Made by a program: the position numbers and the translations under genes | The notes under the pieces: model-generated | Told to the model about the DNA's origin: nothing | Database searches by the model: none | Seen by the model: only the letters and a program-made list of their open reading frames with translations | Shown: piece by piece, positions 1,502 to 50,304 of the stretch | Layout: every line of letters begins with the position of its first letter | Numbering within the stretch: the stretch's first letter is position 1 | NCBI GenBank assembly: GCA_965649765.1 | Contig: OZ287753.1 | Location: 28,086,001-28,150,000 of the forward strand | Length of the DNA stretch: 64,000 nucleotides | Reading direction: 5' to 3' | Source: Bispira polyomma | Taxonomy: Eukaryota

Positions 1502-2487
1502 GCACTCACCCTGTGGGTCTGGCTCTGATGAGACGGGCTTGTGATAGGCTGAACTCAGCTCTCACTCCAGCCACTAATAAAGCATATGACAGGATGTTCC
1601 GACAGTTCCTAGCTTTTGGAGTCTTTATGTCTTGGCCTCCCCACAAGGTGACTGTGTTGCAAATTTTAGCATATCTAGAGTTCATAAATTTCAATGGTGT
1701 TTCGGCCTCTCAGGTAGTAAATCACATGTCGGCTGTGAAGGCAAAATGTGTCATGTTTCATATAGATGTGCAAGTATTTTCTGATCAGAGAATTTCTTAT
1801 TTCACTAAGGCCATGGCTATGCATAGACCTTTACAGGTGAAGTTGAAGTCAATTTTTGATGTGCACTTGCTTAGGGCTCTGATTAGTAAATGTGATAGTA
1901 CTTACATGGGGCAGATTTTCAAGGCTGTTTATTTGACAAATTTTTTCACATTTTTGCATTTATCCAATCTGTGTCCTCATTCAATGGGGTCATACTCTCC
2001 CCTTAAGCAACTAGCTAGAGCTGATGTTTTCTTCAAGCCAGGGTATGCGGTTATCATGGTCAAATGGTCTAAGACACTGCAGAGAAATGATGCAGTTCGT
2101 TTGTTAACCATCCCAAGTATACAAAATTCAATTAGCTGTCCTGTTCAGGCCTTGAAAGCTGTGTTAGCCATCTCACCAAAAGGGAAAAATCTCCCATTAT
2201 TTCAGTTTAAACTCCAAGGCTCGTGGGTTCCACTAACGGACACACGTGTGCGAAGGCACCTCAAAAATGTACTATCCTTACTTGGTACTCAGTACTCTGG
2301 CTTGACCTTTCACGCCTTCCGACGTTCAGGTGCCACCTTTGCGTTTAACAATAATGTCAAGATTCAAGATATTCAAAAGCAAGGCACCTGGACATCGGAT
2401 TGCGTTTGGCGTTACATCTCAGACTCTGTTGATGCTGGTACTCAGGTTGCTGATTCCTTTAAAAATGTCCTACAAAACACCTACTAG
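1502..2487 (+). CDS. E1 tyrosine recombinase (predicted 3' exon; ORF track 1429-2487)
   Basis: WSKT, CPV, HAFRRSGAT, GTWTSDCVWRY motifs. The first catalytic Arg is replaced by His (FLH, CAT at 1957-1959; E2 has FLR). Homology to E2/E3 begins right after the ttttcag acceptor at 1500-1501. Confidence 0.93.
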
Positions 2488-2562
2488 TTTGGGGCTTGTT
2501 GGTCTAACTTAAATATTCAGGCTTAAGATCTGTCAAAATAACAATAAATATTATACCTTTTT

Positions 2563-2871
2563 GGACATAAGGTTCCCCCCTTTATTATATTAGTACATAT
2601 TGTACTCAAGTATCTAAAGTTCGACTTAAAACCCTAAGTCAAACTTTAGACTAGCATAAATTTAAAGTTTAATCTCTTAAGTTTGCACTTAAATCAAAAT
2701 TTTTACCACACCTAAACTCATAACCTTAAACTCAAATCCTCTAAGTTTGGACTCAAAGTCAACTTTGGCACACTTACACTCTTAAACTCATTCTACTTAA
2801 GGTCACCTAAACGTAAGCTTTGTATAAGCTCTAGGCCTTAAACTCACTTGAGTTAAGGGGACCTTATGCCC
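2563..2871 (+). other. E1 structured 3' non-coding domain
   Basis: Closing inverted repeat ggacataaggttcccc (2563-2578) / ggggaccttatgccc (2857-2871). Internal 16-bp stem 2613-2628/2635-2650 with 1 mismatch, plus smaller hairpins. About 9-10 CTTAAA(C)TCA-like motifs. Confidence 0.75.
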
Positions 2872-5800
2872 ACAACAGTATTACGTATTCTACAAAGAAA
2901 TTGTACATAAAAAATGTGTTAGTAGTAGAAATCATATACATATAATAAAGTTTTTAACCGCAATCTTTTCTTACTGTGAGTTGTTGGTTAAATAACTATT
3001 ATCTGCCCACACACCGAGGAACTGCCTCCCCACAGTTGTAGTAGAAAGATAGTCTGTTACACTACAGACAATACATCACTGAGTGACTGAAATACATTAC
3101 ATAATCACATACCCAATTACATTACATCTTCACTCACGTCAGGAGCTACAGAGGTGCCCATTATTTTGTTAAATGACTTTCCTCAGGTTCAGTTTTTTTA
3201 ATTCAAAATCGGTATTGCATTTAATGAATTGTGTGAAATAATTGTTTCTCCCAAAGGCTGTCTCCAAATTTTAACCCTTTATAACAAATATATATTACAA
3301 AATAGTAGCCATATATTACTAATCCTTTTATTACATCTATTATAAAAATTAAAAATAATTAGGATTTTGTTTATAATGTATTAATGTTTGCACAATTAAT
3401 ACCCATATGTTTACATTCTGCATAAACTTGCTTTCAAAGAATAAACCTTTTTTATCAAATGTTTTTTAGAATTTGGTTCAGAATAACATAATCACTAAAG
3501 TGATACAGTTTCAACTAGTCTACTGGTTAAGTAGTTCAACCTATGTACCGTATACCATGCTATGTCATTGGTTATTCCTGAAAGAAATCCAGAAACTAGT
3601 TCTTTTATAGAGAATCACTGTCAACCTCTGTGATTCACCGGTTATTATCTCAACAATTTCTGCTTCACTGACCTTTGAAGGATACTTATAAGAAGTGGGT
3701 CATTATTTACTTTCACTTCGTATTGTCGTATCTTATTTAGGTTTATGACAGGATGAAATCATCTTTCTTGTATCTACAAATTTTACAATTGACATACTCT
3801 TTGTATAAAAGGGATCTCTATATTTACCAGGGACAATAAAATAAATTTTAATTTTTACAAACTTAGCAGAAAAATTCCACTTCTAAGTTAAGAAGCAAGA
3901 TTTTTTGTTTGTTTTACATTTTGACTTGAAATGATTATTTTCATCATTAAAGTAATATAATCAAAGTGACATATAGCATGTACAGTTACTTCATAAAAAA
4001 GAAGAGTTGTCTCTGTCTACTGCTGTCTCAAGACTTGCATCCTCGAAGTCATATAAAAATCATAGAAAATAAGTTTGGCATTTATTTTATTACAGGATCT
4101 GTCTTAGCTTTTATAATGTGGGATAGATATAATACTGATTTAAACTTACTGACAAAATTAGATCACTTGAAGTCGCTAACAAATTTATTTTGAAATGGAG
4201 GCAGGTGAAGTAAATGCTGAGACCAGTTACCCATGGAAAAGTCCTCAGTATTTTTAGGACAGCAGTCTGGGGAACAATGTGACATTGGAGAAAGAAGCCT
4301 GTGTTGTCAAAGAAATGGTTGCATCAAGGCAAAGAAGTGGATGTGATGTCACAGTATATACTGCTGTTACTTCTGTGCAACTAGCATGAATACATCTTGA
4401 CCATGATAGGTTGACTTGTGTAGGCACAATTTTGCTCAAATCAAAAAGCTATACTTGTTGTAATTGGGGATGATAGAAATGTATAGGTCACATCTTGGAT
4501 CTAAGGATCAAGTTACAATTGTATCCTTTTTATCAGTTCTTAAAAAAGGCTGTTTTTGAGCATGATCAACTATTCACCAGAGCATAACTTGTAAAGAAAA
4601 TGCTTAAGAAGAACTAAAAGAACTTTGCAGTAAATTGTAGTTAATATCATCCACAAATCTAATTTAACAATAAAAGCCTTTTGATTGACTTGGACTCATA
4701 TTCACTCTGATGATTATTCACCTTATCTGGCAAAGGGAACCTTACATTTCAAGCAGGAAAATATAGCCCCCAGTTCCATAGGTCTTTAACCTATATAGCA
4801 AAAGCTGACATTCTTGAAAGCAGTTATACAGACTTGACATTTAGATGACTTAGCCAGGACATTGATGGATGTTATTAGCTATGGTATATATCTATAGCCA
4901 TCTAATATGGCCGCTGTGTTTAAAAGGGGGTGTTGACCAACACACATTTATGGAAGCATAATAAGCTAGGGTATACAGAGTACTATTCAGACAAAATTAT
5001 TGTTGCTCACACAATATTTTCTCCATTCTGAAGTTAAGTAGTTTCCATCCTTTGCTAAAACCCCCTCAAAAGGAGTCTTCACTGAAATCCCTTTGTCATT
5101 ATTTGACAAAGCTCATCCTAAAACTAATAGAAATGCAATGACCATGCACTGAGTATTACCGTTTACTTCAATTTTGATTTAAAAATAATTATAAATATTT
5201 GGATATTAAATTGTTTATCAGAACAAGATTATCTCATGGAAATACTATAATTAACTTTGTTATAAAGATAACGTGTCATTTTAGCAATTATTCCACTTTG
5301 AATATTAAGAAAATTTGTCTTATATTCAGAACAACTTGAGATTCAGCTTAATATGGAGGCACAGTTTAATATGGAGTCACAAGAGTGTTCTAGTAATCTC
5401 TGGTTACATGACAATAATGCCCAAAATCTATGGCTATCACTTCTGAAACATTTCACCCCTTCTATCTGCTCATTTTTATTTGTATAATCTTACACATTTA
5501 GCCTAAATATAATTCGAAATACTTGATACTCAAATATAGGGACATTAAATACTGCATCAAAATTTAAATACATCGTTTAAAGCAACCTACTTTCTTATTA
5601 TTTTGTAAACTATTTAAAGTGTAATGTCATTTTATGCAATAGTGGTTCCTAAATGGTTGTCGACAATGTTTTTGAATTCACCTTCTACACCATCAGTTGT
5701 CACCATGTGTCACCAACACCATCTCTTATCAGCATTAGGTTGCAGTGTGTGGTGTTACTTTAAATTAACAAGCTGGATTATGCCTCAGAATATTGGATCT

Positions 5801-6451
5801 GTGGCTAAATCTAGATTAAAGCAAAACGTCCCTCAATTTAAGTCTTCCTTTTATTTAAGCTTTTATTTAAGCTGCCAAAGTATAATATTACTCAAGGTAT
5901 TTCATTTCAACAGGGTTTTTATGACATGTTTAAATATTGGTATAGTGTAAGTAATATTTTTTTCAAGTAAACCATCTTAATATTCAAGATGTATTTAAAT
6001 GATGTCTCAAATTTTCTTATACAATTTTTTATATAACCTTTAACTGAAAAGACCTTTCATGACAACTTGTATAATTCTTAATGATCCCATGATCTATTGA
6101 TTACTTGTCATTTGCCATCAACTTGCTTATTACACATGTCCAAATTAGTTGTGTGAGTGGTGTATTAAATTGGCATTCACTTTTAAGTCACTTACTTGAA
6201 TTGTGGCCCACCTTAAAACAATGTCGCCAAATAAAAATGAAACTAGTGAAGAATTTGGTGAATATTATAAAGTAATAATGTGGAATAATAAGGTGTTATA
6301 ATGTAACAGTAATACAATGCATATCAAACCAATTAATCTTTAAAATCTATTTAATGGGCTTTTTACTAATACGTGGTAGGGTAGTCGTAAAGTACAGAAT
6401 TGATGTCAGTATAACATGGGTCACTCTGACTCAAAGCTGTAAATTCTCTCT

Positions 6452-6695
6452 AGGCCGTAGTGGCCTAGTGGTAATAATAAGCATCTACTTTAATGTCACT
6501 AGCCCCTCTTTCTCCCATCTGAGGACGGTGACTTTAATTCCCATTGTTTCTCTGTCATGTGATAAAGTTTGTGGTCAAGTACGTGATGTATGGTAAGTGG
6601 TTTAAACAGTACAAACACTACTTGTTTTCCTTCACCAATACACTAGGCGGTCACCAATGATGTGTTGAAAGTGACAAAACACTCAAATAAATTCA
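6452..6695 (+). mobile_element. Degenerate tRNA-derived SINE (Meta/MESC-like core)
   Basis: A-box tggcctagtgg, core tttccttcaccaat, tail tgttgaaagtgacaaaacac. Related pieces at ~20850-20930 (minus) and ~24840-25005. Confidence 0.6.
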
Positions 6696-7079
6696 GATTC
6701 TTACTTTTCCTTATCTTAATGGCATTATATTATTCTGTAGTATCACATAACATAATTTGTTGTGGTTGTTACTATGCTGCTTTGACATGATATTACACAT
6801 ACACCTTCTATAAAGCTCTTGTATAAAAAATAATTCAGACCTCAGAAGTCCCAAAGATTGGCAAGATTTACTATAAAAGCCACAAATATTGTATTTTACT
6901 CTTGGAACAACTATATCTACTTCAATTTGTTTTTGAAAGGGACTAAATAAAGTTGCTTTTATACCACCAAGCCTTTACTTAACTAAAGCTTTCTTTATAT
7001 TTCAGAAAGTTCTTCATGAGATGAGGATTAATAGCTTCGTATACATGTTTTAAACTGTTCACAAAATAGCGTCAAAGAT

Positions 7080-7640
7080 GTGACAATTATGGCAGGTATT
7101 TTTGTTAAAAGTGAACATTTGTGTAACAAGTGACAGTATGATCCGTACACGTTGCAGAAGGCCACAGAAGGTCTGGGTTAGTGGGCATAAGTCTGCAAAC
7201 ACGAGGATGAGTTACCAAACACATTGAAGATGGTTTTGAGGAAATGATAGCAACTGTTGCAGCGTTCGTTGACCTCTCACCTGCTTATGACTTAGTTAAC
7301 CACAAATGCCTTTCTTCACAAAATTCTAGAACTTAATATATTCACCTAACAGGACTGATTAAAAACATGCTTGGGAACAGGCCTTTCTTTATTCAATTGG
7401 GCGCTAAAAAGAGCAAATGGTGAAGTGGACTTAAACCACCTCAGTGCCAACCCATCGAAGACAGAGATGTGTGCTTTCATCTGCGCAATTGTGAAGCAAA
7501 ACGCAAGCTGTAATCACTTAGCATATCTAGGTGTCACCCAAGATCGATGCATCTCCTACAAAACGTATGTTGAGAAGACAAAAGCAAAAGTCTGTAGACT
7601 TTCTGTGCTGTCCACTACTAGAGCAACAAAGCAATGCTAA
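7080..7640 (+). pseudogene. Decayed non-LTR retrotransposon RT fragment
   Basis: Frameshifted translation gives VAAFVDLSPAYDLVNH, LSANPSKTEMCAF and YLGVTQDRCISYKTYVEKTKAKV, typical of LINE RT subdomains. Confidence 0.75.
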
Positions 7641-10850: not shown

Positions 10851-12373
10851 GATTCGGTTGCTAAGCTTTAGAAGATGCCTCGCATCAAAATATAAAAGTA
10901 AAAAAATTTCTAAATATAAACGTAAGACATACAATTCAGTGTTACTGTTGTTGATTTCAGTTGATGATTAGTAAAATTTGGTTAAAACCTTTGCAAATCA
11001 TTTCCCCTTTAATTGTGCAGGTCACAAAGTATTTGTGGTTTCCACTTTATCAATAGCAAATATTGTGGGGTTCTGGCAGTGGCATTATAAAGGCTGTACT
11101 TTATAATTGGAAACAAGCAACTAGCCAATAAAAATGGAAACACCCTAAAATATTTACAATACCACACTTTGTGTGGGTTAGGGTATTAATGTCATTTCTA
11201 TATTGTAGTTTGTTTTTATTTAATTTAATTTAATTTATTTAATTGGCTCAAACAAGTATTCACATCAGAATACTTTTAAAACAGTCACAGTCTATGGGGC
11301 TTCATTTCCAGGTCGCTTTGCATTCATCTCAGGGGAAATAACGAAGATAACATGTTTTTGACTGCAGGATTTTTGTAGCACAGCAAAATACAATTTAATG
11401 GTTGATGGTTAAAAAATATCCCGATGCCTTCGAGTTCAAATACAAGTTAGACATTATAAAAGCCACTATTTTAAATATTAAAGCATTCATTTATCTTTAG
11501 TGACAGTCAATTCAGTAAACAAAACAATGCAAAACACATTGTTAACCTTGCATTGTTAATATGACTTAACATAAGTTAATTTATATTCATACAAGTGACA
11601 GAAGTTACACTAAAAATAGTTATGAACAGTGTTATGTATTGACACATTTAAAACTGCAGTGACAATATGATAGAATTCTATATTTGTTGTAATTAACATG
11701 CTGAACTGTTTCCAATAATAGTTTCCAATAACACACTATCGAGTTGTATAAATATAACCAAGGTAATTTTATTTTTATTATTATTTTGGTAGGATAATCG
11801 TTTACATGTTTCTGAGACACAACAAGATGTTCGTAAGGGTCATAGATATTGATTTACTATAATTTGTAAGGTAGCCCGAAGGGGCTAGCAGGGTCAGTGT
11901 TAAGCAGGGACTTTATTAAGAACCTTTCTGGTCTGTATGACCCCAGTTTTCATTGGCTGTCAAATAACCTAATTTACACAGATTCCCGCCAAATAGCCTA
12001 AGGGGTTGACTTACTAAACCAAAGTCAAGCAGGCAACACACCATATTTAAATATAAACAATTTACCTTTATTTTATTTTATTTTTACATTTATGTGTTAT
12101 CTTGGAAGTCTAATACCTCACAGAGATTCAACTGATGGTTGCTGATCTTACTGGAGTGTTACAGACGGCATAATGCTTTGATATATGCGAATATTGCTCT
12201 GCTGTTTGTTGGAGCAGATTCTTGGGGGAAGTATTTCACTTCTACTCTTACTGTGGTATAAGTACAATTTATGTCACATCCAGCTCAGTATCCGCAGATA
12301 TCAAAGCACGGTCTTGTTTATATTGTGTTTTAGTGACATTTAAATTAACTGATTATAAGGAACTATCAAAGGA

Positions 12374-13448
12374 ATGGCACCCCGTAGACTTTATAAATGC
12401 ACGGCTTGTAAGACAAAGCATATAAAGCCAATTAATGAACAATGCCCTTGGCAGGATTTGGATAGCGACACGGAAGAAGCACAAAATGACAATACTATAT
12501 CAACAGCAGAGGTAAACCTTCGTATACTCCAAGAGTTAAAGGAACTTGGTAATAGAATGGCAAACAACCAGTGAGTAGCACACGGATACGACAGACACAG
12601 GCATTTGGCAGGTAGCAGGCACTGCAGCAACCCCAGGATCAGGCATTTGGCAGGCAGCAGGTGGTACAACAGACTCACAACGTGGAGGCAATTGGCAGGC
12701 AACAGAACCAATGGCCCACAGATGCAGAAGACCTGGTAGTCCCCTCTATCGAGACCTTAAGGCAGTCAGACCAGCTCCAGCTGCCAGTTGACAGCAGGCT
12801 GAAAGATTTGCAAGGATCAATGAGACAGGTAATTTCAAGTCTCAAAGGGGAGCACAGAAACAGTGTGGGTAAAGCAACATGTCCCTCGGCCCCAAAATTT
12901 TATTCTTGGAGGTCAGAGTAAAAATCGTATGTCTTACGACAATCTTTCCATGGCTCAGTGGGTTTCGGGGGTTTAGTGTTATAGCGCAAGAAGAAACAAA
13001 TGTAGAAATTAAAAATGCAATGCTGGAATACCTCGTAGAAATGATGGAAGATTGTCATGACTTCAGCTGGTCAGCTGCTAAAGGCAGCCATGCCGTCCTC
13101 CTATGTAAAATGGAGGAAGGCAAAATATCCTGGCTCGATACACATAAAATCGACAGGGTCAGACGAGCTCATGCTCAGAAACATGTACCTGCTCAAAGCT
13201 CCTCTTAATCATATAGCAGTAAAAGTGGCAGTAGCAAAGGCATGCCATGCAAATTCTACCAAAAAGGAACATGTCCCCATAAAAGTGACCATGAAACTAG
13301 TGGTAAATTTTATATACATGTATGTGCGACTTGTTCTGCAACGGGCAAGAACTTTCCCCACCCGGAAAAAGATTGTAGGAAAAAGATAGCTGCTGGGGCA
13401 AAAAACAAAATAGGCACTGCGAAACGGCAGTGCAACCAGATGAAATAA
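12374..13448 (+). pseudogene. E2 gag-like ORF (several frameshifts/stops)
   Basis: N-terminal CTACKTKHIKPINEQC Zn-binding motif and coiled-coil-like segment. Central GNFKSQRG..PQNFILG..YDNLSMAQWVSGF..CHDFSWSAAKGSHAVLLCKMEEGKISW. C-terminal CKFYQKGTCPH and CATC..HPEKDC zinc fingers. Homologous to E3 gag. Confidence 0.85.
13400..13433 (+). promoter_or_regulatory. Predicted -1 programmed ribosomal frameshift signal (E2 gag-pol)
   Basis: A-AAA-AAC at 13400-13406 in gag codon phase, a 7-nt spacer, then stem-loop gcactgc/gcagtgc (13414-13433). The -1 frame is open into ORF 13430-13753. Confidence 0.75.
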
Positions 13449-15764
13449 TTATGAAATGTTCGGATAGCATGAACAATTCAGAAAAAAGAACAAATTGCAC
13501 GTTGTCTCGAATTGTTTCTAACTCAAGTAATAGCAATGACATAAGTAATAACTGGAGAGCTGATTGGTCTCGGTTCGTAAACAAAACGTATGCACAAGTT
13601 GTGCAACAGGGCAGTAGTCAGAAAAAGGGCTCAAATGCAAATAAAATAAAACATAGTCTCCCCAGTTGTTCCTTCAAAGCCATTGCAAATGTAAATGTAA
13701 ATGTCAACAAATGTCATAGTGTACATACAAATGTCGGTAAAGTACATAAATAAAAATGTCATAACACAGAAAAGGTGAGTGCTGGCAAGTTGCCAGGGCC
13801 TAAATCACCAATTGTTGAGAACAATGGGGTTATAGTACAAAATCACTTTGACCCGCTTCTCTCCCTCAATGAAACGCCCCCCCCCCTCAAAATGTCACAA
13901 AGGTGGGTACACACACTGCAGGGTCACACAGGTGTACTGAACCAGCTAAAATAAATACTGAAACTTGTGCAATACAGGAGGACAAGTATAACCTCCAACT
14001 CCAAGTAAAAAACAGACATAAGGATATAGTTGCAAAGGCAAAAAATGGAATAGCCAGACAAAAGGTAAGTTCGGCTTCATTCCACTTAGTGAACTCATAA
14101 ATCTGGACACTGAAAAACCGAGTTTCAGAAATCACTCGGCTATCGAAATGCATACAGAGGTGAAAAGTAGTGCACAGCACAACTTTGTGAACAAACAGTT
14201 GGTAGTACATTCGCAGCTTAATTATGACAAATGGAAAGAACTTCTTAAAAACTACTGGGATACACAGTTACCATATTTGATTCGCTATGGCTTCCCACTA
14301 GATTTTGATAGGAAGTGTGAGTTAAAGCATAATGAACAAAATCACCACTCAGCTCGTGAGTTTACAGAAGACGTTAGGGCATATTTGAAAGAGGAAAAGG
14401 ATCACGGGGCAATTTTGGGTCCGTTTAACCGACCTTCTATTTAAGGACTGCATATATCACCATTCATGACCAGGGAGAAGCCTGGGGCCCCTCATAGGAG
14501 GGTGATAATTGATCTCCAGTTTTCTCCATGGCCATACAGTTAATGCAGCAATACACCAAAATCAGTATCTGGGAACGGAATTTCTATTAACCCTCCCAAC
14601 AATTGATGACGTCACAAATGAATTAACCAAATTGGGTAAAAACGCATTAATTTACAAGCTGGACATAAGTCGCGCCTTTCGTCACGTAAAATTAGATCCA
14701 GCTGATTATGACCTTTTAGACTTGAAGTTAGATTAGTACTACATTGACACGTGTCTACCATTTGGCTACAGACACGGCAGTGCCATATTCCAACGTTTAA
14801 GCGACGCAATGCATTACGTCATGCGTACCAAGGGATATGACGTAATAAATTATATAGACGACGTCATAGGGTACGGCAAAGCTCCTCACGTCCAAGATGC
14901 GTTTGACGCACTGTACAATCTTGTTCGAGAACTAGGTTTTGCAATAAGTGATAAGAAACTGGTAGCTCCTAGCAAAAGAGTAACGTGTCTGGGAGTACTC
15001 ATTGATACTGAAAATTTTACAGTAGAAGTTCCTCCAAAGAAACTAAGACAAATTTTACAAGTTTGTGATAGCTGGATAGGTAAAAAAGAATGCTCAAAAA
15101 GAGAACTCCAATCACTGCTCGGTTTCCTCCTTTACATATCAAAATGTGTGCGAGTAGCAAGAATTTTTCTCAACAGGATGCTAGACGTCCTGCGCAACGC
15201 ACCTGACGTAAAACGTATCAAATTAGAACTCCCCTTCTTCCAAGACCTGAATTGGTTCACTAAATTCACCAAAAAATTTAATGGTAAGGCCTTTTTCGAC
15301 CATAACCCAGTCACTGACCAGATGGAATTAGATGCCTGCTTAACAGGATTAGGTGGTCAATGCAATAATATAGTATATACAAAAATGCTCCCACTTCACT
15401 ACTTACAACTTAACATAGCTCATTTAGAAATGCTAAATATTCTAGTTGCTCTGCGGCTCTGGAAAAATGCATGGCAAGGCAAAAAACTAGTTGTACATTG
15501 TGACAACCAAGCAGTAGTCACTATTCTGAACTCGGGTAAGACAAAAAACTTAATTCTTGCAGCTATTACGCTTAACATCTTCATGGAAGTAGCAGAGGCA
15601 GACATTAACCTAAGGCCTGTGCACATATTAGGCAAACTTAATGTCAGAGCTGACTTGCTATCTAGATGGCATAAAACCTCTAAACCAAATACTGAATTGT
15701 GACAACTAGTGTCGAATGGGTAGAAGTCTCAGATAACATGTTAAATATTGACTGGAGTATTTAA
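13400..15764 (+). pseudogene. E2 pol: long N-terminal linker + RT + RNase H, disrupted
   Basis: Fragments 13430-13753, 13903-14100, 14148-14444, 14509-14736 and 14809-15702. Motifs KLDISRAFRH, LPFGYRHG, YIDD, ELDACLTGLGG, HCDN, ADLLSR. Likely original stop TAA at 15762-15764. Confidence 0.92.
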
Positions 15765-15774
15765 TCTATTTCAG

Positions 15775-16762
15775 ATATATCACCCCTGTCGCTCAATTAG
15801 CTGACCAGGCAGCATACACAGCCCATCAGGCCTTTAGGCCTGCTACACAGCATGCGTATAAAAGCATGTTTAGGGTATGTTTAGCCTACACCATATTTGC
15901 AAGCATTGACATTATCTACACTTCACCCACAGTTTTACTGTCATTTCTCCAAGTATTGGTAGCAAGTAAAGTCTCCCAGCCATCAATTGCCAATTATTTG
16001 GCTGCCATCAAAGCCAACCTTAGCTTGTATGGAATCAATGTCTTGGCCTTCTCAGACCAGCGTCTCAAATATTTCTAAAAGGCCCTAGTATTGCAAAGAC
16101 CATTCAGAGCAAGAATTAACAAGGTAATTGACATCCATCTGCTTACTCAAATAGTACAAATCTGTGACACTATGTATATGGGCCAAATCTTCAAATCAGC
16201 TTACTTATTAGCTTTCTTTTCCTTTCTTAGAATATCAAACCTGGTACCTCACACACTACATTCATTTAACCCACTGGAACAGTTAGCCATGGGGGATGTG
16301 TTCTTTGCTCCTCCTGGTCTACATTTATTAATTAAGTGGTCCAAAACCCTCCAGGACAAAAATCCAGTCAGAATAATTAAGATTCCCCGTATATATAACT
16401 CACCACTTTGTCCAGTAGTGGCCATAAGAAACACACTTGCTCTTTCACCCGGAACTCAAAACTCCCCTTTGTTTCAGTTTAAAAGTACAACAGGTTGGGG
16501 CCCACTCACAGACTCAAAACTAAGACATAATCTGAAGCAAATTCTCTCAAGACTTAACATGTCAGACTCCCCTATTACATTCCATGACTTTAGAAGATCT
16601 GGGGCCATGATGGCCTCCAACAATCATGTTCCCCTCCAGGATATCCAAAGCCATGGCACATGGACATCAGAATGTGTTTGGAAATATGTCACAAAAGACC
16701 ATAATGCATCCGACCAAGTAGCCATGGCATTTCAAAACCTACTATACAACCCTACTCCCTAA
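15775..16762 (+). pseudogene. E2 tyrosine recombinase, disrupted
   Basis: FLRISN, WSKT, LCPV, HDFRRSGA, HGTWTSECVWKY. In-frame TAA at 16076-16078 and an inferred 1-nt deletion near 15788. Confidence 0.92.
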
Positions 16763-16822
16763 TTTGGGTTTGGTGCTTTCTTTTAATCTCTTATATACTA
16801 TAAATACCATATCATGTATCTT

Positions 16823-17057
16823 AGACTAAGGTCACCTTTAAGCAGTAAACGTAAACTCAAATCTAACCTTAAATCACTAAGATTACCCTACCTTAAATCA
16901 CCATCTTAATCTAAGATGGCCTTAAATTCATATGGCATCTTGGGCTAAGATGACCTTAAATTCAAACTTATACTCAACATAGGGTAACCTTAAACTCTTA
17001 ACTTAATCTCAGTTAAGTTGTGACTTTACGACCATCTTAAACTGGTGACCTTAGTCT
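16823..17057 (+). other. E2 structured 3' non-coding domain
   Basis: Perfect 14-bp inverted repeat agactaaggtcacc (16823-16836) / ggtgaccttagtct (17044-17057). Nested stems ttacccta/tagggtaa, ccatctta/taagatgg, catctt/aagatg and aacttaa/ttaagtt. About 9 CTTAAA(T/C)TCA-like motifs. Confidence 0.8.
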
Positions 17058-17221
17058 TTCAGTTTGTACATAAAAGTAGATTAACAAAAAAGTAGAATAA
17101 ACTAATTACCCCAAAGGTTATGTTATCACTCTGTTATAAACCAACTACAAGGTCACCCTAGGACACTGAAATTATGCACAAATAAACACAACTAAAACAA
17201 ATCTGATTTCTTAAAACTGGA

Positions 17222-20200
17222 TCAATTGCAGGTAAAAACCATACTCAAAACTTTTGTCACTACATTTTTACTCAAGAATAAAAGATTTTAATGTACTTAG
17301 GGCTGGCCCGTCTCTATATTTTGTAAATATAAATTGATGGAAACAAACAAGGAATTACCAAAACTCTAAAATAAAAATAAAACAAATTCCAATTCACAGA
17401 TAGGCCAGATATGAGTCCCCAATGGTGTTTGAAGATAGGGAAGTTAGAGTGGGGCAGCAGAATGATGTCAATAAAGTATTTGATTTCTGCAACAGTAATA
17501 TATAGTATTTTGCACAGAAACAGCCATTTCTATCTGATGCTTAAATGTCAAGAAAAAAATTTAAGGGACCCTTACTTTCAAGATTAAGACAACATATCTT
17601 GATGAATGGCGATACATACTTTATCACTACTATTTATTTAATGTTAAAAATTTTTAATTTGTGCATGCCGTGAAGCTATACTTAAAAACTGAACTGATAA
17701 TTGTATGTTAGTTCAGTTTATACATTAGATGGTATAATAGACTAGATAGAGTCTTATAAAACAGTAGGCTTAACTCTAAACGTGTACAAAATTATCAAAT
17801 ATTGAAACCTACCAAGAGGGCTGGATGTACAACTTTCTGTTGCTGCCCCTATGTTATGGAATAATCTCCCTGTTAAGCTTAGATCACCCGAAACATTTTC
17901 TGGTTTTAGGAAAAACCCCGTAGTTCTATCTCTAAACACCCCAAATCCACCCTTACCGCGATGGCTATGTTTTATACTTCTCTATTGGTTAATTGGTTCT
18001 GATGGTGGGCATCAATAACGTGCTTTAAAAATACAATAATGTAATATCGCTTTCAGGTGTTTAATATCCATATTAGCAGGTGTTAAGTTACAATTATGTA
18101 ATAATGCAGCAAGTTCCCTTCTAACTCAGTGCATCTGAATAAATTGTAACCCACCTTTTTCAAATTTGTTCCCTGTTAAAACTTAAAAAAAAAAACCTTT
18201 ACACTTCTCCCTAACATACCACTGGCCAATCGCCACACAGGTACCTGTTTAGCATAGCGTTCACGCCTATCCACAAAATTCATTTTCACATTGAATGCAA
18301 ACAAGGAAGGACGTTTCAAGAAATTTAATTGCCATTGGACCACCTCCTAAGTATTAAAATCAAGTTCAATATATATTTATTTAACTTGACTTTCAACATC
18401 TTTGGTGACAGCCATATTTATTGCTGGATGAAACAATCCTTTCAAGCTTTATTTTATATGTCCTGATGAGGTTTATTTTCGTCAGACTTCAACCAATTTT
18501 TGTTTCCATCCACCCTACAGACATATGTTTCTATCTGTCTCATTTCATTGCAATTATGTGCTGAAAGATGTATATATGTAGTTATGTAAAGTTTGGATGA
18601 GTTTCTGCTGCTTTCTGCAGCATATTGGTATGACATCAGCCGAAAGAGGGAACAAAGCGAAATTCACATGTACATATTTGTCACATGGGTTTCATCATAT
18701 TAATAAATTCACAACAAAAAAACCATTACCACTATAGTAGCTAACAATTGATAATTTTGGAAAGACCACAATCAAGTTATCCAGTACAGTGCAAATGCTT
18801 TAGCAGAAACATTGAAACAGATTCAGTACATAATGAGCCAAAAATCGGCCAGATCTCTCTGTAAAAACAAAAAAAAAATGGGAAGCTTCTGTCGACATTT
18901 AATATATTAGGATAAAAGTATTAGGATAAAAAAAATCGGCCAACGTCGGCCGATATATGTCTGAGAAATGGAAGCCTCGGCTAAATCAATGACATACAAC
19001 AAGTACAGCAATTTTTTCCACGCCAAAAGACCTACTGGGATTTAATCCCATTGTCCTCAGATGTCAGTGGTAGTCTCTCAGAAGCTATTGACAATTAAAG
19101 CAGACACACATAACCACCAGGCCACTAAATATTGGGAAAATGCCTACTTTCTACTTTTGCTGGAAATTGTTAAGGAAATACTTTTGAACTTCCTTCAACG
19201 CCACAGAAAAAATACTAACTTTTTGTCAAACCTAAAGTTTAAATACATGTGCAGCAGATTTTGTTTACCAAGAAATGAGAATAACTTTCATAGTCGTAAT
19301 TAGGGCAAGGTGAGTAATTAGGTATACTTTGGACACACTGTACTGATCCTTGACAATAAAAAGAAAGCTTTTCTGGCGTTAATATTATGGAGAAGACATT
19401 TGATCATATAAAAATGTCAAAACCTCACCAGAGACAGGATCTAGTGGCCAGTGCTCTGCATTCCTATACCATGAAAGATTAAAACTAAGTATACTCATGC
19501 ATGATAATAGCTTCACCTATGGATTACTGTATATTGTCTTTATGGACCTACTTTATATAATACCTTGCCACACATCACAGTAGAACTGCCTGGACATTAC
19601 AATCAATTAATGGTTTTTGTATTGATGCCTTTGCCCCATAATTTTTATTCTCTCCACAGTTGTCTGATTGATGTTGATCTCTTTCTGACGCTAGCTGATG
19701 ATGTTTGTCTTCCAATATGTGTTTTTAACAGTGCCTTAGAATTTGGCTTCAGTGGGAAATGAAGTACTATAAGTACCCTATGGTACCTTATAGTCTAATG
19801 TAATAATTAATAATACACCGTAAGAGGCATTGTGGCATCCGTACTGATGTCTCTTCATACCTTAAAAAAATGCCTTTAGCTTCTCGTTCATTATCGAATT
19901 CTGTTTAAAAATCCATGTCACTACTTGCAAAGCTGTTGTCTCTCCCTTCCACTTTGCTACTGGCCTTTCCTTCAGTAACCTCAAGAGTGAAAATATACTT
20001 CCTGTTAAACCCACCAAGTGTACTGAATCTAAAGCTTTCTCAATCGCTGCCCCATCTTATGGAATGCTCTCTTAGTAGAGATTAGATCACAAGAACAACT
20101 TTCTGGGTCTTAAATTGCCGGGGGTAATCTAAAATTACAGTGGAGTAATTTAAAGGAGGGGGGGGGGGGGGGGGGTAATATAGAAAGGCTTCACCGGGAT

Positions 20201-24640: not shown

Positions 24641-27457
24641 AATTTTGTTGTGTTCTGATCATATCACAACAGCCAGATTCAGAAACCAGTATTGACACAC
24701 TGTAAACCACCAACCTGATAACTACCATGGCAACTATCTGACAAACATGCCCACAAGAAGTAACGAAGAGAATTCAAACCCACATTGCTGGGATGCCAGT
24801 GATTTTATATAGCAGGCACTTCTAACCACCAGGTTTCACAATCACTGGCCTCTTATCAATGTGGATTTGAATCTTGTTCATTCCTATTTAAGGTGGAAAG
24901 TTTGTCAGCTACTGACCATAGCTTCAGCACTAGTTTCTTCCACTGATAAATGTCATGGCATAACCCTAGTTGTTGAAAGCGACGTAAAACCCAAAAGCAA
25001 ACATAAGAACACTTTTCCAGACAAGGAAGAAAAGTAAGAGTTTTAATGCTTAAAGCATAAAGTTAACAAGTCATATTTGTGTAACCTATTCACAGAAATA
25101 GTTTTCTCATGTTGTTATTGCTGTTTTTAGATTTTTTGTTTTGGCTCAATAAAGGATTGATCTACTAACAAGCAAAACCTACAGATCATCTAAAAAGGCA
25201 GAAAGAAACACAAAACAAATTGTTGTCATTTGTATAGCTTACTCTGTTAATAATTTTTGTTGATGCTGATTTACTATACCAAGGTTCCCTTCTCGGTTTG
25301 TTAGCAGCAAATAAATGACCTTAAAATGGTATTTTCTGACATTTTTGAGAGGTTTTTTAAAATATTTGTTTTATTGTTACTGTTTTATATGACTCAAATT
25401 ATGGCACTTGTTGGATAAGGGGCTTGTCACAACATTTGTTTTAATAAAAAAAATAAAGACTGGGTTGTTTTTTTAAATACAATGTTTATCTATGGTGGAT
25501 CTAATATCTATCTCAGTGTCTGTTTGATTGTTCACATAATGTTTACAGTTTATTTGTATTAATATTCTGTAAACATTCAACATAGGAAGTGTCCTCACTA
25601 ATACTAAACAAATAATATTCTATATCTATAAAATACAAGTATAAAGGTACTCAGTGGACCACACTCCTGAAGCAAAATGGCATGTCAAAGTCAACCAACA
25701 GACACATGCCGAAAACATAATCTCCTTGACTGAGGTAAAAACAGAATAATATACTTATATCTACTGAGAGTTGTAAATCAATAAGCTCATCTTTGTTTAC
25801 GTGTCACAGACTCCCGTGTTGTCTCTCACTGATGTCCAGATCTTTTGTATCTTATACAATTAGAGTTACAGTCACATAACCAAGGAACCAAGGCCATCAG
25901 AGATATGTGTCAAACGATTTGTCTCAACAGCAAAAAGTTTGAAAGCACAGAATTTGAGACACTAAATAGCATATTCCATTTTTTTCACTCTACACAAAAA
26001 GCGCAAAAAGATACATTCACTAGCCAACTAAAAGCAACAATAAAACCTTAATTCCATTATGTATGAGGGGCTGTCAAAAGTGTCAAAACTGCTTATACAG
26101 TGGACCAAATCATCCTTTACTGCAACATGTGTGTTATCTAATACCTCTGAAAACTGTGTTCGTGACAAAGTCAAATTCATATTTCCTGCTTTAGTCCTGG
26201 CTTTACAAGTGATCACTTTTGACCAGAGAAAGCTGTTTTGGGGGGCAGGCTCTGACTATAAATTGAATTACACTCTGAATGGCTGCTTTCTGAACTATAT
26301 TTGCAGCACTGAAAGCCCCTCAAGAATTAAAGCTGCAACTTAGATATTGGAAATATTTAATTCTTCACATAGAAGTTTGAATTTTGTTAAACCCTTTTAA
26401 GCTTTAGCATAGGAAGTATAATGCACTATATAAGAATAAAAGCAATATGCTCACATTTCTGCTGACACAGGAATATTGAGGACAACTTCATGGCATACCT
26501 ACATATGCTGAATGTAAAAATGAATCTAAATTACCATTTTTGTTAAAAAGTCATATGATGCCGTAAATCACTCCACGCCACATGAATAATAAGTAAGATG
26601 TGAGATGTATTTAACAGTAAGTTGAGGTCCTACCATAGAGTCTTATGTATTTGAAACACTTGAAAGGTATAACTCATTTTTAATTTTACCAATTTACCCG
26701 TTAGCTATTATATTTATTACAAAGTTGTCCTTAGCTTTGCAATTGCCTTGAATATTATCACATGTGTAGAAAATAAATCTTGTCTATGAGCATAGCTGAT
26801 GACATTAGTACATACACAAAGCCTCACTAATCCATAATAGCTGTTTCTTTGTGAGATGATATCACTTCTTCTGGTAAAGTGAGACAATGTATACAATGAA
26901 TCATCTCATATCATGTTCTGACCAATATTTCTCCATGATGGTTATTGTGAATAATCTGACGTACAGTTATATACACAATTTTAGTACTCATCTAGTACTT
27001 ATCATGTGCAGCAAACTAACCATCAACTGAAGAAGGCATTTGATCATTCTTATCTGAAAACTGCTGAATCACCACAAACAAACATACATGCAACTACTAC
27101 AACTATCGCTAAAACCAAGAATAAAAAATGGCAAGGTAATCAGGAAAAGTAAAACTGTCAGGAAATGTCTCACAATCATCCAGTGATACATAGATTTATG
27201 TCACTTTCGACCCTAAACGTGCCGACAACATAGCGTTCGAAAGGATTAAGACCTTTATGCGGTCATGCTTAGATTTTAGGATTAGCGTGTGTAATTCTTT
27301 CTGACACCAAGCCGTCAAAACATAGGGGTAGAAAGCTTTAAGACCGTTCTACAGTCATGCTTAGGGAATTTGAGATGATATTGTGAGCATTTTAAGACTT
27401 TATCAAACACATTCCCTTTTCTGCTATCAGTACCCCCACCACACCCCTCCCCCTTAC

Positions 27458-45376: not shown

Positions 45377-45787
45377 TGATATGGGCGAAGTGCGCCCAGG
45401 TTCAGTCAACTGTGCAAGTTATAATCAAATCACTATTATGCAAGTTTATACTAGGGTCTCTTCAGGGCTTCCATAGGGTCACCTCACTTTGTGGCTGGGG
45501 AATAATTCCATACCTCAGACATATCAACCTTCACACTTTTCTGGTAGGGAAAAGCTCACTTTCAAACACTGCAATTTGTCATGTACACATTTTTATTTCA
45601 GACATTCCAATTTGTCATGTACACACTTTTATCCCAGACTTCAATTTGTCATGTACACACTTTATTAACTTCTCGCTTTTCCGCTGTATTTTTCCCCACC
45701 TGTCCAAAGTCTTGGTCCCTATATAAACCCCTTTCCCCCTGGGTTCTTTGCATTTGATTGTTGTTGTGCTGCCAGTAATTTTCTTGC
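45377..45787 (+). repeat. E3 repeat A1
   Basis: Four differences counted by eye against A2. Begins with hairpin gggcg-aagtg-cgccc and contains three ~35-bp subrepeats aatttgtcatgtacaca. Confidence 0.95.
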
Positions 45788-49614: not shown

Positions 49615-49627
49615 CGTATAATTTCAG

Positions 49628-50296: not shown

Positions 50297-50304
50297 TTGG
50301 GTTT

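What the first reader, a model, noticed from the sequence alone, without database searches (positions are those of the whole stretch)
16823..17075. E2 3' domain: multibranch fold with a repeated CCTTAAA(T/C)TCA motif displayed between stems
Seen: a perfect 14-bp closing stem (16823-16836/17044-17057) encloses stem ttacccta/tagggtaa (16883-16890/16980-16987). That stem in turn encloses hairpins ccatctta/taagatgg (16901-16919) and catctt/aagatg (16936-16952), followed by aacttaa/ttaagtt (17000-17019). The motif ccttaaa(t/c)tca sits in the unpaired junction right after almost every stem arm (~16868, 16891, 16920, 16954, 16988). TGTACATAAAA follows at 17065. This strict stem/motif alternation is not explained by ORFs or terminal repeats. 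Inference: a cis-acting RNA or ssDNA scaffold presenting several protein-binding sites, for packaging, priming, circularisation or localisation. YR retrotransposons have no clearly established primer or packaging signal, so this may be an undescribed functional module.
Basis: partly seen in the sequence, partly recalled or inferred. Interest (0 to 1): 0.85.

Follow-up and report, generated by a model that had tools for sequence, protein, structure and literature searches.

The report
Conserved palindrome array in Ngaro tail
The folded-looking 250-base stretch is a decayed copy of a control region that sits after the recombinase gene of many Ngaro-type jumping genes; it is built from repeats of one 13-base palindrome, and its binding partner and exact job are still unknown.

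Summary
The fold z-score is -7.2 on the + strand and -9.6 on the - strand. CCTTAAA occurs 5 times in 141 nt against 0.03 expected.

The region is the 3' non-coding domain (the Ngaro 'B' region) of E2, a dead Ngaro-like YR retrotransposon at about 11866-17168. The real unit is a strict 13-nt two-fold-symmetric element, TAAGG-N3-CCTTA, whose spacer is almost always TCA, TGA, CCA or TGG. On the + strand only, it is often followed by AAAYTCA.

The same unit, layout and downstream boxes (UGUANAUA, AATAAA, terminal GGRCACTG) recur after the YR gene in 14 of the 15 Ngaro families compared. These share 45-64% YR identity and come from at least three assemblies. The module is therefore conserved and almost certainly functional.

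The stems are simply C-centred copies pairing with G-centred copies of this one motif. Covariation beyond the motif is weak and there is no G·U strand signature. In the same elements the B|A circle-junction hairpin covaries strongly.

An RNA or ssDNA scaffold is therefore plausible but unproven. A double-stranded binding-site array remains a serious rival.

The parts
11866..17168 (+). E2, a decayed Ngaro-like YR retrotransposon (gag-like ORF1, RT/RNase H, YR; no methyltransferase). It has the A-ORFs-B form, without the A2-x-B2 repeat part.
   Evidence: Pfam RVT/RNase H and Phage_integrase hits. tblastn against E1 proteins. The 5' end aligns to the A regions of L001 and L024. The virtual 3'|5' junction folds like the B|A junctions of relatives. 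The 3' domain has no second copy anywhere in the window. The ends are inferred by homology, good to a few nt.
15797..16762 (+). YR (tyrosine recombinase) coding remnant of E2. It has an in-frame stop at 16076-16078 and further stops at 15707-15751 in the N-terminal part. Its stop codon is at 16760-16762.
   Evidence: 46% identity to the E1 YR over 318 aa; translation; PF00589 hit at E = 9.5e-6.
16763..17168 (+). E2 3' non-coding domain, equivalent to the Ngaro 'B' region. It contains everything in the finding.
   Evidence: B1 repeats of relatives start directly after the YR stop. The landmark order is shared with them.
16763..16773 (+). G/T-rich box TTTGGGTTTGG directly after the stop codon. 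It is conserved and strand-specific.
   Evidence: GGTTTGG is present in 8 of 13 families and its reverse complement in none. Seen.
16823..16836 (+). P1 5' arm, a C-centred 13-mer unit (TAAGG-TCA-CCTTt, centre 16833) plus an E2-specific 4-nt outward extension.
17044..17057 (+). P1 3' arm, a G-centred unit (centre 17047). It is the exact complement of 16823-16836.
16878..16890 (+). P2 5' arm, a variant unit TAAGATTACCCTA (centre T at 16884).
   Evidence: 12 of 13 Watson-Crick pairs with 16980-16992. It carries 3 compensated pair changes (offsets -1, 0 and +4) relative to the GGCCACC/GGTGGCC stems of relatives.
16980..16992 (+). P2 3' arm, TAGGGTAACCTTA (centre A at 16986).
16901..16919 (+). Apical hairpin a: CCATCTTA / TAAGATGG. 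The 3' arm is the left half of the unit centred at 16918.
16936..16952 (+). Apical hairpin b: CATCTT / AAGATG. The 3' arm is the left half of the unit centred at 16952. It looks like a diverged 34-nt duplicate of hairpin a plus its tail.
   Evidence: The motif spacing is 34 nt. TRF did not score it as a tandem repeat.
17000..17019 (+). Small hairpin AACTTAA / TTAAGTT.
16867..16998 (+). Five + strand copies of CCTTAAA(Y)TCA, starting at 16867, 16891, 16920, 16954 and 16988. Each is the right half-site plus a strand-specific tail.
   Evidence: Across families TTAAACT occurs 13 times against 2 for its reverse complement.
17065..17072 (+). TGTACATA box (UGUANAUA in RNA), conserved about 20-30 nt after the last unit.
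   Evidence: Present in the same relative position in 12 of the first 13 families and in both added later.
17096..17101 (+). AATAAA, the likely poly(A) signal. It is followed by the AATTACCCCA box at 17104-17113.
   Evidence: The order UGUANAUA - AATAAA - AAT(C)CCCA - end is conserved. That it functions as a poly(A) signal is inferred.
17148..17160 (+). An extra C-centred unit (CAAGG-TCA-CCCTA) just before the element's end.
   Evidence: L022 has one in the same place.
17161..17168 (+). Terminal GGACACTG, the 5' arm of the conserved stem that spans the B|A junction.
2488..3025 (+). E1 3' domain, the counterpart in a second Ngaro family with intact ORFs. It has units centred at 2804 (C) and 2860 (G), CTTAAACTCA tails at 2724/2780/2836, TGTACATA at 2902 and AATAAA at 2944. 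The end is inferred at about 3025 (GAGGAACTG).
   Evidence: The covariance-model hit at 2792-2905 has E = 0.085. The end is inferred from L022.

Best explanation
What it is (confidence about 0.9). The stretch is the central part of the 3' non-coding 'B' domain of a dead Ngaro-type tyrosine-recombinase retrotransposon. It is a conserved cis-module made of 2-7 copies of a strict 13-nt two-fold-symmetric unit, TAAGG-N3-CCTTA. The spacer is TCA or CCA in the 5' copies and TGA or TGG in the 3' copies. On the + strand only, the unit is often followed by AAAYTCA. The module lies between the YR stop codon and a conserved UGUANAUA-AATAAA 3'-end region.

How it most likely works (confidence about 0.4; inferred, not shown). 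The module is transcribed into the 3' UTR of the element's RNA. C-centred and G-centred units pair there, or in the single-stranded cDNA copied from it. This gives a long, imperfect, branched hairpin whose helices and AAAYUCA tails form a repeated docking platform for an element-encoded nucleic-acid-binding protein. The best candidate is the Gag-like ORF1 protein. It has an invariant N-terminal Cys-Cys-His-Cys knuckle followed by a conserved heptad-like segment that I read by eye as a possible coiled coil (not tested), and a C-terminal Cys/His cluster. RT is the alternative. Docking would mark the element's own RNA for assembly into the replication particle and for the start of cDNA synthesis near the 3' end.

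Shown: the motif, its conservation, its position, its pairing potential and its linkage to YR genes. Inferred: that it is transcribed, that pairing occurs in vivo, and what binds it.
For: 1. Conservation. AAGGT[CG]ACC occurs almost only in the domain after the YR stop in every family sampled. The most widely shared 7-mers across 13 family 3' domains are all pieces of this unit: more than 45 words are shared by 6 or more families, against 2.5 expected.
2. Strict unit. Exact TAAGG..CCTTA occurs 17 times with a 3-nt spacer and no more than twice at any other spacing. With up to one half-site mismatch allowed, the spacers are TCA 9, TGA 9, CCA 8 and TGG 7, plus four single others, so complementary types are balanced.
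3. Layout. The order c1..(c2..g2)..g1 - UGUANAUA - AATAAA - AATCCCA - GGGGCACTG is shared by E2, L014, L015 and L016, and partly by L022, L024, L025, L026, L001 and L007. By my hand tally from those listings, the C-centred arm precedes the G-centred arm in about 15 of 16 pairs.
4. Mirror order. The outer and inner stem types are arranged as a hairpin requires.
5. Some compensated changes: L016 P1 (A-T to G-C), E2 P2 (offsets -1, 0 and +4), the two L026 units, and family-specific stem extensions in E2 (4 bp) and L022 (up to 18 bp perfect). In L003, L007, L023 and L025, units are paired by minimal partner arms (GGTCAC, TGGCC) that are not full units.
6. All families fold better than shuffles (z from -3 to -8 except E1).
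7. The main array lies upstream of AATAAA in every family with an array, and the tail TTAAACT is strand-specific (13 against 2). Both fit a transcribed, single-stranded reading.
8. ORF1 has invariant Cys8, Cys11, His15 and Cys23 and a conserved I-L-x-x-L segment.
9. How cDNA synthesis starts is unknown for YR retrotransposons, and a 3' hairpin has been suggested for DIRS-1 (PMC7192593).
Against: 1. Covariation beyond the motif is weak. The own-family rank in an arm-complementarity test is 0.43-0.49, where 0.5 is the null. The central 7 pairs are nearly invariant and so uninformative. By my hand tally, uncompensated single-side changes at offsets 4-6 (about 18) outnumber compensated ones (about 6).
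2. There is no RNA-type signature: G·U 10 against A·C 11 among 260 stem cells, and no consistent strand preference in z-scores. The B|A junction hairpin of the same elements shows G·U about 14 against A·C 4 (my tally of the per-pair listings) and strong covariation.
3. An invariant helix sequence is hard to explain by protein recognition of an A-form RNA helix. A fixed two-fold-symmetric 13-mer is the classic signature of a dimeric protein on duplex DNA.
4. Topology is not conserved: serial in L001, local hairpins in L003, L007 and L024.
5. E2 and L022 carry an extra unit downstream of AATAAA.
6. There are no expression, probing or binding data. Only 15 families from about 3 assemblies were sampled, most from one assembly.
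Confidence: 0.4

Rival explanations
1. The module is a double-stranded DNA site array. Each 13-mer is a complete palindromic site for a dimeric DNA-binding protein acting on the integrated, circular or duplex-cDNA form. The protein could be element-encoded: accessory 'arm-type' sites for the YR, or ORF1. It could also be a host transcription factor. One strand of every unit reads T(T/C)AAGG(T/C)CA, which resembles NR5A/FTZ-F1 (YCAAGGYCR) and ERR (TNAAGGTCA) extended half-sites. In complete elements B lies 300-500 bp upstream of the A-region TATA box. On this view the apparent fold is a by-product of having palindromic sites in both orientations.
For: The core is invariant, the 3-nt spacing is fixed and the unit is two-fold symmetric. 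Covariation beyond the motif is absent. G·U equals A·C. Site arrangement varies between families. Extra units lie downstream of AATAAA near the terminus in E2 and L022, and one lies in the A region of E3. Both variants, AAGGTCA and AAGGCCA, fit the Y position of the NR5A consensus cited in PMC7239656 and PMC3861103.
Against: When sites are anchored only on AGG[TC]CA, the downstream CC-TTA is as conserved as the upstream flank: +6 is 41 of 51 and +10 is 40 of 51. A nuclear-receptor monomer site does not explain that. Position 2 is T or A rather than the consensus C. A 3-nt spacer is too short for a YR core site, which needs 6-8 bp between arms (established knowledge of Cre, Flp and Xer). The C-before-G order and the mirror order of the two variants are unexplained unless inherited. 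Partial partner arms that are not sites occur (L003, L007, L023). In L023 the GTCAC/GTGAC pairs persist while the AAGG part is lost. The + strand-only AAAYTCA tail is not symmetric.
Confidence: 0.3
2. The module is a host-directed 3'-UTR element. The structured array works on the RNA through host factors rather than element proteins. It could act as a nuclear-export element for an intronless transcript, like the mirror-symmetric constitutive transport element of simian type D retroviruses. It could instead control use or read-through of the adjacent poly(A) signal, which must be bypassed in B1 and used in B2 of complete elements.
For: The array lies directly upstream of a conserved UGUANAUA - AATAAA - CA - G/U-rich region in all families. 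UGUA is the CFIm upstream element and UGUANAUA is the Pumilio element (both from my own knowledge). A conserved host partner would explain motif invariance across families that share only 38-59% ORF1 identity. The layout is mirror-symmetric.
Against: There is no sequence similarity to any Rfam family. The helix sequence is invariant rather than loop or bulge sequences. There is no G·U signature. B1 and B2 are identical, so a cis element alone cannot distinguish them.
Confidence: 0.15
3. The module has no function of its own. The pattern is left over from local tandem and inverted duplications of a short palindromic seed in a decaying element.
For: E2 is dead: it has in-frame stops and a frameshift. 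Its two apical hairpins and tails look like a diverged 34-nt duplication. E1 has 56-nt direct repeats and L026 has 127-nt direct repeats in the same region.
Against: The same 13-mer sits in the same position with the same flanking boxes in 14 of 15 families, which share 45-64% YR identity and come from several assemblies. These include young copies with intact ORFs and 99-100% identical B1/B2 repeats. The surrounding B sequence cannot be aligned between families.
Confidence: 0.05
4. The block is an independent MITE-like repeat that happens to lie next to the YR gene.
For: None was found.
Against: The covariance model and motif scans over the window plus 15 loci (222 kb) find it only directly after YR stop codons or in B2 copies. 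The one other hit (window 26293-26411, E = 0.18) has no units. Its position relative to the stop codon and the element end is fixed.
Confidence: 0.02

Closest known systems
Ngaro split direct repeats (A1-ORFs-B1-A2-B2; Goodwin and Poulter 2004, as summarised in PMC9210276)
   Same: The finding lies in the region that is the 'B' repeat in complete relatives. B1 starts right after the YR stop. E3 in this window is a textbook example (45372-51285).
   Different: E2, E1 and L001 carry only one B and no A2, like L018, which is a one-B copy of a family that normally has the repeats. The internal palindrome array of B has not, to my knowledge, been described. In the relatives an extra unique segment x (0.6-1.6 kb) separates A2 from B2.
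DIRS-1 internal complementary region and the proposed 3' priming hairpin (PMC7192593)
   Same: Both are non-coding cis-elements near the 3' end of a YR retrotransposon thought to act on single-stranded nucleic acid. The primer for cDNA synthesis is unknown in both.
   Different: The ICR is complementary to the element's termini and is needed for circle-junction repair. Here the analogous covarying structure is the B|A junction hairpin, not the palindrome array. There is no sequence similarity.
3'-UTR stem-loops of stringent-type LINEs recognised by their own RT (for example PMC5135761 and references in it)
   Same: Both are structured elements in the 3' UTR just upstream of the poly(A) region of a retroelement RNA, and both could serve as a recognition point for starting reverse transcription.
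   Different: LINE stem-loops are single, family-specific hairpins recognised by shape and loop. Here the element is a multi-copy, sequence-invariant palindrome shared across deeply diverged families.
Integron attC sites (folded single-stranded substrates of a tyrosine recombinase)
   Same: Both have two nested pairs of inverted repeats (outer and inner) around a variable centre, both are associated with a tyrosine recombinase, and a single-stranded DNA intermediate is plausible for YR retroelements (PMC7192593).
   Different: The arms are 20-50 nt apart rather than forming two boxes around a 5-7 bp spacer. No extrahelical bases were identified. The array is 110-330 nt away from the actual recombination junction. 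The element boundary lies in a different hairpin.
NR5A/FTZ-F1 and ERR monomer response elements (YCAAGGYCR; TNAAGGTCA)
   Same: One strand of each unit contains AAGG(T/C)CA, with the same T/C choice as the consensus.
   Different: Conservation extends symmetrically to CC-TTA. Position 2 differs from the consensus. The units sit in a 3' UTR.
Retroviral constitutive transport element and packaging or dimerisation palindromes
   Same: All are long 3'- or 5'-UTR hairpins with two-fold symmetric repeated elements, or palindromes that can pair within or between RNA molecules.
   Different: There is no sequence or Rfam similarity. The function here is untested.

Membership tests
Ngaro-like YR retrotransposon (host element E2) | RT/RNase H followed by a tyrosine recombinase ORF | tested here: met
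   RNase H-type Pfam hits (RT_RNaseH, RVT_3) on the ORF at 14809-15702 and PF00589 on 16091-16762. 50% identity to the E1 RT and 46% to the E1 YR.
Ngaro-like YR retrotransposon (host element E2) | No methyltransferase domain between RT/RNase H and YR (this distinguishes Ngaro from DIRS-like elements) | tested here: met
   The RT/RH ORF ends at 15702 and YR homology starts at 15797. In E1 the two ORFs overlap.
Ngaro-like YR retrotransposon (host element E2) | Split direct repeats A1 ... B1-A2-B2 | tested here: not met
   16763-17110 has no second copy in the window and no long direct repeats were found. Close relatives L024, L014-L016 and L022 have them, and L018 shows that one-B copies arise within such families. 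I read E2 as a one-B derivative, so it is filed as Ngaro-like by genes and termini rather than as a complete element.
Ngaro-like YR retrotransposon (host element E2) | Termini homologous to Ngaro A start and B end | tested here: met
   The 5' end aligns with the A regions of L001 and L024. The terminal GGACACTG and the A-side CAGTGT form the junction stem seen in 8 families.
Any Rfam RNA family | Covariance-model match | tested here: not met
   No match up to E = 1 in 16000-18000 on either strand.
Conserved structured RNA (generic criterion) | Folding significantly better than dinucleotide shuffles | tested here: met
   z = -7.2 and -9.6 for E2; z from -3 to -8 in 10 other families on both strands; E1 is weaker at -1.2.
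Conserved structured RNA (generic criterion) | Compensatory covariation across homologues | tested here: inconclusive
   A few compensated pairs were found. The core pairs never vary, own-family and cross-family complementarity do not differ, and G·U equals A·C. The positive control in the same elements, the B|A junction, passes clearly.
Integron attC-like folded ssDNA recombination site | Two recombinase-binding boxes formed by nested inverted repeats around a 5-7 bp spacer, with the crossover inside the site | tested here: not met
   The outer and inner arms are about 35-50 nt apart on the 5' side. The element boundary lies 110-330 nt downstream, in another hairpin.
Tyrosine-recombinase core site (lox/FRT/dif type) | Inverted 11-13 bp arms flanking a 6-8 bp crossover spacer | tested here: not met
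   The unit has 5-bp half-sites and a strict 3-nt spacer.
NR5A/ERR response element | Match to YCAAGGYCR or TNAAGGTCA | tested here: inconclusive
   AAGG(T/C)CA is present in all units, but position 2 is T or A rather than C, and conservation continues symmetrically beyond the 9-mer. The consensus was taken from PMC7239656 and PMC3861103. Binding is not testable here.
MITE or other autonomous short repeat | Copies unlinked to YR genes, with their own target-site duplications | tested here: not met
   None was found in the 222 kb searched with the model or the motif. A search of the whole source genome was not possible.

The most novel reading that the evidence does not exclude
The palindrome array, together with the covarying B|A junction hairpin, is the long-missing cis machinery of YR-retrotransposon replication. 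The units would be docking sites that a dimeric element protein (the ORF1 zinc-knuckle protein or the YR) reads on folded single-stranded cDNA or RNA, either to start cDNA synthesis or to assemble the recombination complex. That would be a eukaryotic counterpart of folded single-strand substrates such as integron attC.
Probability: 0.15. Interest if true: 0.8.

Novelty: new variant of a known kind. Interest (0 to 1): 0.5.

Why it matters
How YR retrotransposons prime reverse transcription, select their RNA and rebuild their ends is still largely unknown. The only experimental work concerns the DIRS-1 ICR (PMC7192593).

This analysis gives the field concrete mutable targets in Ngaro elements, and they behave differently in evolution:
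- A sequence-invariant, multi-copy 13-nt palindrome array in the 3' domain.
- A G/T-rich box placed at the start of B, as a polypurine tract is placed before a 3' LTR.
- A strongly covarying double hairpin exactly at the circle junction.

The array also gives a cheap annotation signature for the 3' domain of this Ngaro clade, including copies that lack split direct repeats and are otherwise called 'degenerate' (compare DIRS-54_XT in PMC9210276).

The E2 copy itself is dead and has no consequence for its host.

Tried and rejected
1. Rfam scan of 16000-18000 at E up to 1: nothing.
2. BLAST of the E2 and E1 3' domains against the whole window: no other copy and no E1-E2 similarity at the DNA level. 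I therefore dropped the idea that E2 has diverged split repeats.
3. MAFFT alignment of 3' domains across families misplaced the 3' arms of E2, L001 and L022. It was not used for pair counts.
4. A covariance model built from L014-L016 found E2, E1, L001, L022 and L024 only weakly (E = 0.001-0.3) and registered E2 on its inner stem. I judged it too unreliable for R-scape-like statistics, so I made centre-anchored pair tables by script instead.
5. The metagenome scan with a YR alignment gave 3 short, distant loci without usable 3' flanks.
6. A primer-binding-site reading (TGG + tRNA 3' end) fits only the E2 3' arm and no other family. Rejected by inspection of the sites.
7. A U1 or 5'-splice-site-like reading of AAG|GUSA is weak. 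Not pursued.
8. A second transcription unit A2-x-B2 encoding a small protein: no ORF in x is conserved between families. Dropped.
9. TRF did not support a formal tandem repeat in 16860-17000.
10. The window hit at 26293-26411 and the motif near 55500 contain no units.
11. Goodwin and Poulter 2004 is not in the held library.
Full report
**Setting**

The window has no N runs and about 35% G+C. It carries three retroelements that encode RT/RNase H followed directly by a tyrosine recombinase, with no methyltransferase. That is the Ngaro-like gene order.
- E1 runs off the left end of the window. Its YR stop is at 2487 and its ORFs are intact.
- E2 is the element in the finding.
- E3 (45372-51285) has textbook split direct repeats A1 ... 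B1-A2-B2.

Elements of the DIRS order (which includes Ngaro) are reported absent from birds and mammals (PMC9210276). I do not take this contig for human.

E2 is a dead copy. The RT homology is split between frames near 14520-14534. The YR homology has an in-frame stop at 16076-16078, and there are further stops at 15707-15751. I built no repaired or consensus version of any gene. The consensus lines printed by the alignment tools were not used.

**Check of the observation**

- The region folds far better than dinucleotide shuffles on both strands: z = -7.2 on + and -9.6 on -.
- CCTTAAA occurs five times in 141 nt against 0.03 expected.
- The precise multibranch drawing is one of several nearly equivalent pairings, because the arms are repeats of each other. 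The MFE has an ensemble frequency of 0.0008.

**Relatives**

The E2 and E1 recombinases have no close relatives in the protein collection. The best matches share 64% and 57% identity. There are hundreds of relatives at 40-64% identity, nearly all from one ENA assembly (ERZ22147071).

I fetched the genomic context of 12 of them. With E1, E2 and E3 this gives 15 distinct families, including one from a second assembly (L023, ERZ25073805).
- Copies of the same family define the element ends. Most families have A1-ORFs-B1-A2-x-B2, with B1 starting just after the YR stop.
- L018 is a one-B copy of a family that normally has the repeats.
- L001 is the closest relative of E2. It sits inside a 682-bp satellite, which fixes its ends to the base (1665-7435, no target duplication), and it also has a single B.
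- L024 is close to L001 and keeps the repeats.

I therefore read E2 (and probably E1) as A-ORFs-B derivatives. Homology to the L001 and L024 A regions and to the conserved termini places E2 at about 11866-17168.

**What the block is made of**

In all families except E3, the domain after the YR stop contains copies of one unit.
- The 9-mer AAGGT[CG]ACC is almost confined to that domain in about 300 kb of sequence.
- The most widely shared 7-mers among 13 family 3' domains are all fragments of the unit.
- The unit is a strict TAAGG-N3-CCTTA: exact matches occur 17 times with a 3-nt spacer and no more than twice with any other spacer. With up to one half-site mismatch allowed, the spacer is TCA (9), TGA (9), CCA (8) or TGG (7), plus four single others.
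- When sites are anchored only on the non-symmetric word AGG[TC]CA, the downstream CC-TTA is as conserved as the upstream TA. The whole 13-mer is therefore two-fold symmetric.
- On the + strand only, the right half is often followed by AAAYTCA (TTAAACT 13 times, reverse complement 2).

In E2 the units are centred at 16833 (C), 16884 (T), 16918 (G), 16952 (G), 16986 (A), 17047 (G) and 17154 (C).

**Layout**

The order of landmarks is conserved:
1. a G/T-rich box at the stop codon;
2. a C-centred unit of type GGTCACC;
3. a C-centred unit of type GGCCACC;
4. a variable apical part;
5. GGTGGCC;
6. GGTGACC;
7. UGUANAUA about 30 nt later;
8. AATAAA about 30 nt later;
9. an AAT(C)CCCA box;
10. a terminal GGRCACTG about 50 nt later.

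E2, L014, L015 and L016 share the full nested form. L022 and E1 have P1 only.

In L001 the pairs are serial. L003, L007, L024, L025 and L026 have local hairpins or a different nesting. L023 keeps only GTCAC/GTGAC pairs. By my tally from those listings, the C-centred arm comes first in about 15 of 16 pairs.

**Is it a selected fold?**

For pairing:
- The two unit variants are in mirror order.
- Complementary spacer types are balanced.
- Some arms have minimal partners that are not full units.
- There are family-specific stem extensions (E2 4 bp; L022 up to 18 bp perfect).
- There are several compensated changes: L016 P1; E2 P2 at offsets -1, 0 and +4; the two L026 units.

Against pairing:
- The central seven pairs never vary, so they say nothing.
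- Beyond the 13-mer, pairing is at chance level.
- Arms are no more complementary to arms of their own family than to arms of other families (normalised rank 0.43-0.49).
- Of 260 stem cells, 217 are Watson-Crick, 10 G·U, 11 A·C and 22 other, so neither strand is favoured.
- z-scores are negative on both strands with no consistent preference.

The same elements provide a positive control. The B|A junction forms a double hairpin (GGCACTG | inner hairpin | CAGTGCC).
- 11 of its 17 pairs show compensatory changes.
- 90.8% of cells are paired.
- 0 of 500 shuffles reach the observed values, and the slid controls are far lower.
- By my tally of the per-pair listings, G·U outnumbers A·C 14 to 4.

Real covariation is therefore detectable in this data set, and the palindrome array does not show it to anything like that degree.

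A covariance model built from L014-L016 finds E2 (E = 0.03), E1 (0.085), L001, L024 and L022. It finds nothing unlinked to a YR gene in 222 kb.

**Interpretation**

The invariance of a two-fold-symmetric 13-mer across families that share only 38-59% ORF1 identity and 45-64% YR identity points to sequence-specific recognition by a protein, probably a dimer.

Three physical readings remain open:
- each unit as a 5-7 bp mini-hairpin with a triloop;
- each unit as a duplex-DNA site.

I favour a transcribed, single-stranded platform, at about 0.4. My reasons are the strand-specific tail, the array's constant position upstream of the poly(A) signal, the mirror order and the compensated variants. The elements also encode a plausible partner, an ORF1 protein with an invariant N-terminal CX2CX3HX7C knuckle, a conserved heptad-like segment that I read by eye as a possible coiled coil (not tested), and a C-terminal Cys/His cluster (no Pfam match).

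A duplex-DNA site array gets about 0.3. It could be YR accessory sites. It could also be host nuclear-receptor-like sites, since AAGG(T/C)CA resembles YCAAGGYCR. Its support comes from the lack of covariation and of any G·U signature.

A host-directed 3'-UTR role in export or poly(A) control gets about 0.15. A non-functional duplication relic or a MITE is unlikely given the conservation.

**Limits**

- Relatives come mostly from one assembly of unknown taxon.
- The source genome of the window could not be searched.
- The E2 ends are inferred by homology.
- Poly(A) signal function, transcription and any binding are inferences.
- The resemblances to CFIm and Pumilio motifs, the constitutive transport element, attC and YR core-site geometry rest on my own knowledge.
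- Several counts are my own hand tallies from the cited listings rather than printed outputs: C-before-G order, compensated versus uncompensated changes, and G·U versus A·C at the junction.

Noticed in passing
B1|A2 junctions: L014 7413-7468, L015 7409-7464, L016 7443-7498, L024 7479-7534, L003 7455-7510, L022 7411-7470, L007 7564-7625; window 50493-50548 (E3); virtual junction of E2 (17161-17168 joined to 11866-11905): The circle junction of Ngaro elements forms a conserved double hairpin. The last 6-9 nt of B (GGCACTG-like) pair with A +33-39 (CAGTGCC-like) around an inner hairpin, and the element boundary sits right after the outer 5' arm. 11 of 17 pairs show compensatory changes, 0 of 500 shuffles reach the observed values, and by my tally G·U exceeds A·C 14 to 4 on the + strand. 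It is probably the recombination or end-repair site.
   Followed up: yes
window 17065-17113; same relative position in L001, L003, L007, L014-L016, L022-L026 and E1 (2902-2949): A conserved, strand-specific series UGUANAUA - about 25 nt - AATAAA - about 8 nt - AAT(C)CCCA, followed by a G/U-rich stretch. It looks like a complete poly(A) region (a UGUA upstream element, also a perfect Pumilio-type 8-mer). RNA ending there would lack the last 50-90 nt of the element.
   Followed up: partly
window 16763-16773, 2488-2500, 50297-50306; L003 6940-6952, L007 6899-6910, L025 5018-5030 and others: A G/T-rich box (TTGGGGTTTGGGG-like) lies immediately after the YR stop codon at the start of B. It is strand-specific (GGTTTGG in 8 families, reverse complement in none). 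Its position recalls a polypurine tract in front of a 3' LTR.
   Followed up: no
window 45372-51285: E3 is a more distant Ngaro with classic split direct repeats: A1 from 45372; B1 50298-50510; A2 from 50506; B2 51073-51285; 97-99% identical. Its B lacks the 13-mer array. One unit-like site lies in A (45480 and 50614).
   Followed up: partly
L001 1-1664 and 7436-12996: The closest relative of E2 is inserted in a 682-bp satellite. The uninterrupted repeat shows a precise insertion with at most 1 nt of ambiguity and no target-site duplication, as expected for tyrosine-recombinase integration.
   Followed up: yes
L018 1677-7457 compared with L016/L017 1850-8870; L008 6906-10626: Within single families there are one-B copies (A-ORFs-B) and copies with an extra A-x-B unit. 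The repeat part therefore expands and contracts, presumably by recombination between B copies.
   Followed up: partly
ORF1: window 12374-12568 (E2 N-terminus); L001 2157-3101; L014 2463-3443; L022 2292-3302 and others: The gag-like ORF1 has an invariant N-terminal Cys-X2-Cys-X3-His-X7-Cys knuckle, a conserved ILxELKxL segment and a C-terminal Cys/His-rich cluster. It has no significant Pfam match.
   Followed up: partly
window 12598-12706: Three 42-45-nt tandem copies of CAGGCATTTGGCAGG(T/C)AGCAGG lie inside the E2 gag-like region.
   Followed up: no
window 61863-62886: A 147-bp (or 295-bp) tandem repeat with 7 copies. Each unit starts with the inverted repeat GACCTTG ... CAAGGTC, which contains a perfect TCAAGGTCA. 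I saw no link to the Ngaro elements.
   Followed up: no
between A2 and B2 in L003 (7682-9254), L007 (7783-8429), L014 (7611-8502), L016 (7642-8425), L022, L024: A unique 0.6-1.6 kb segment 'x' separates A2 from B2 in these families. It has no ORF conserved between families and is not part of the textbook Ngaro scheme.
   Followed up: partly
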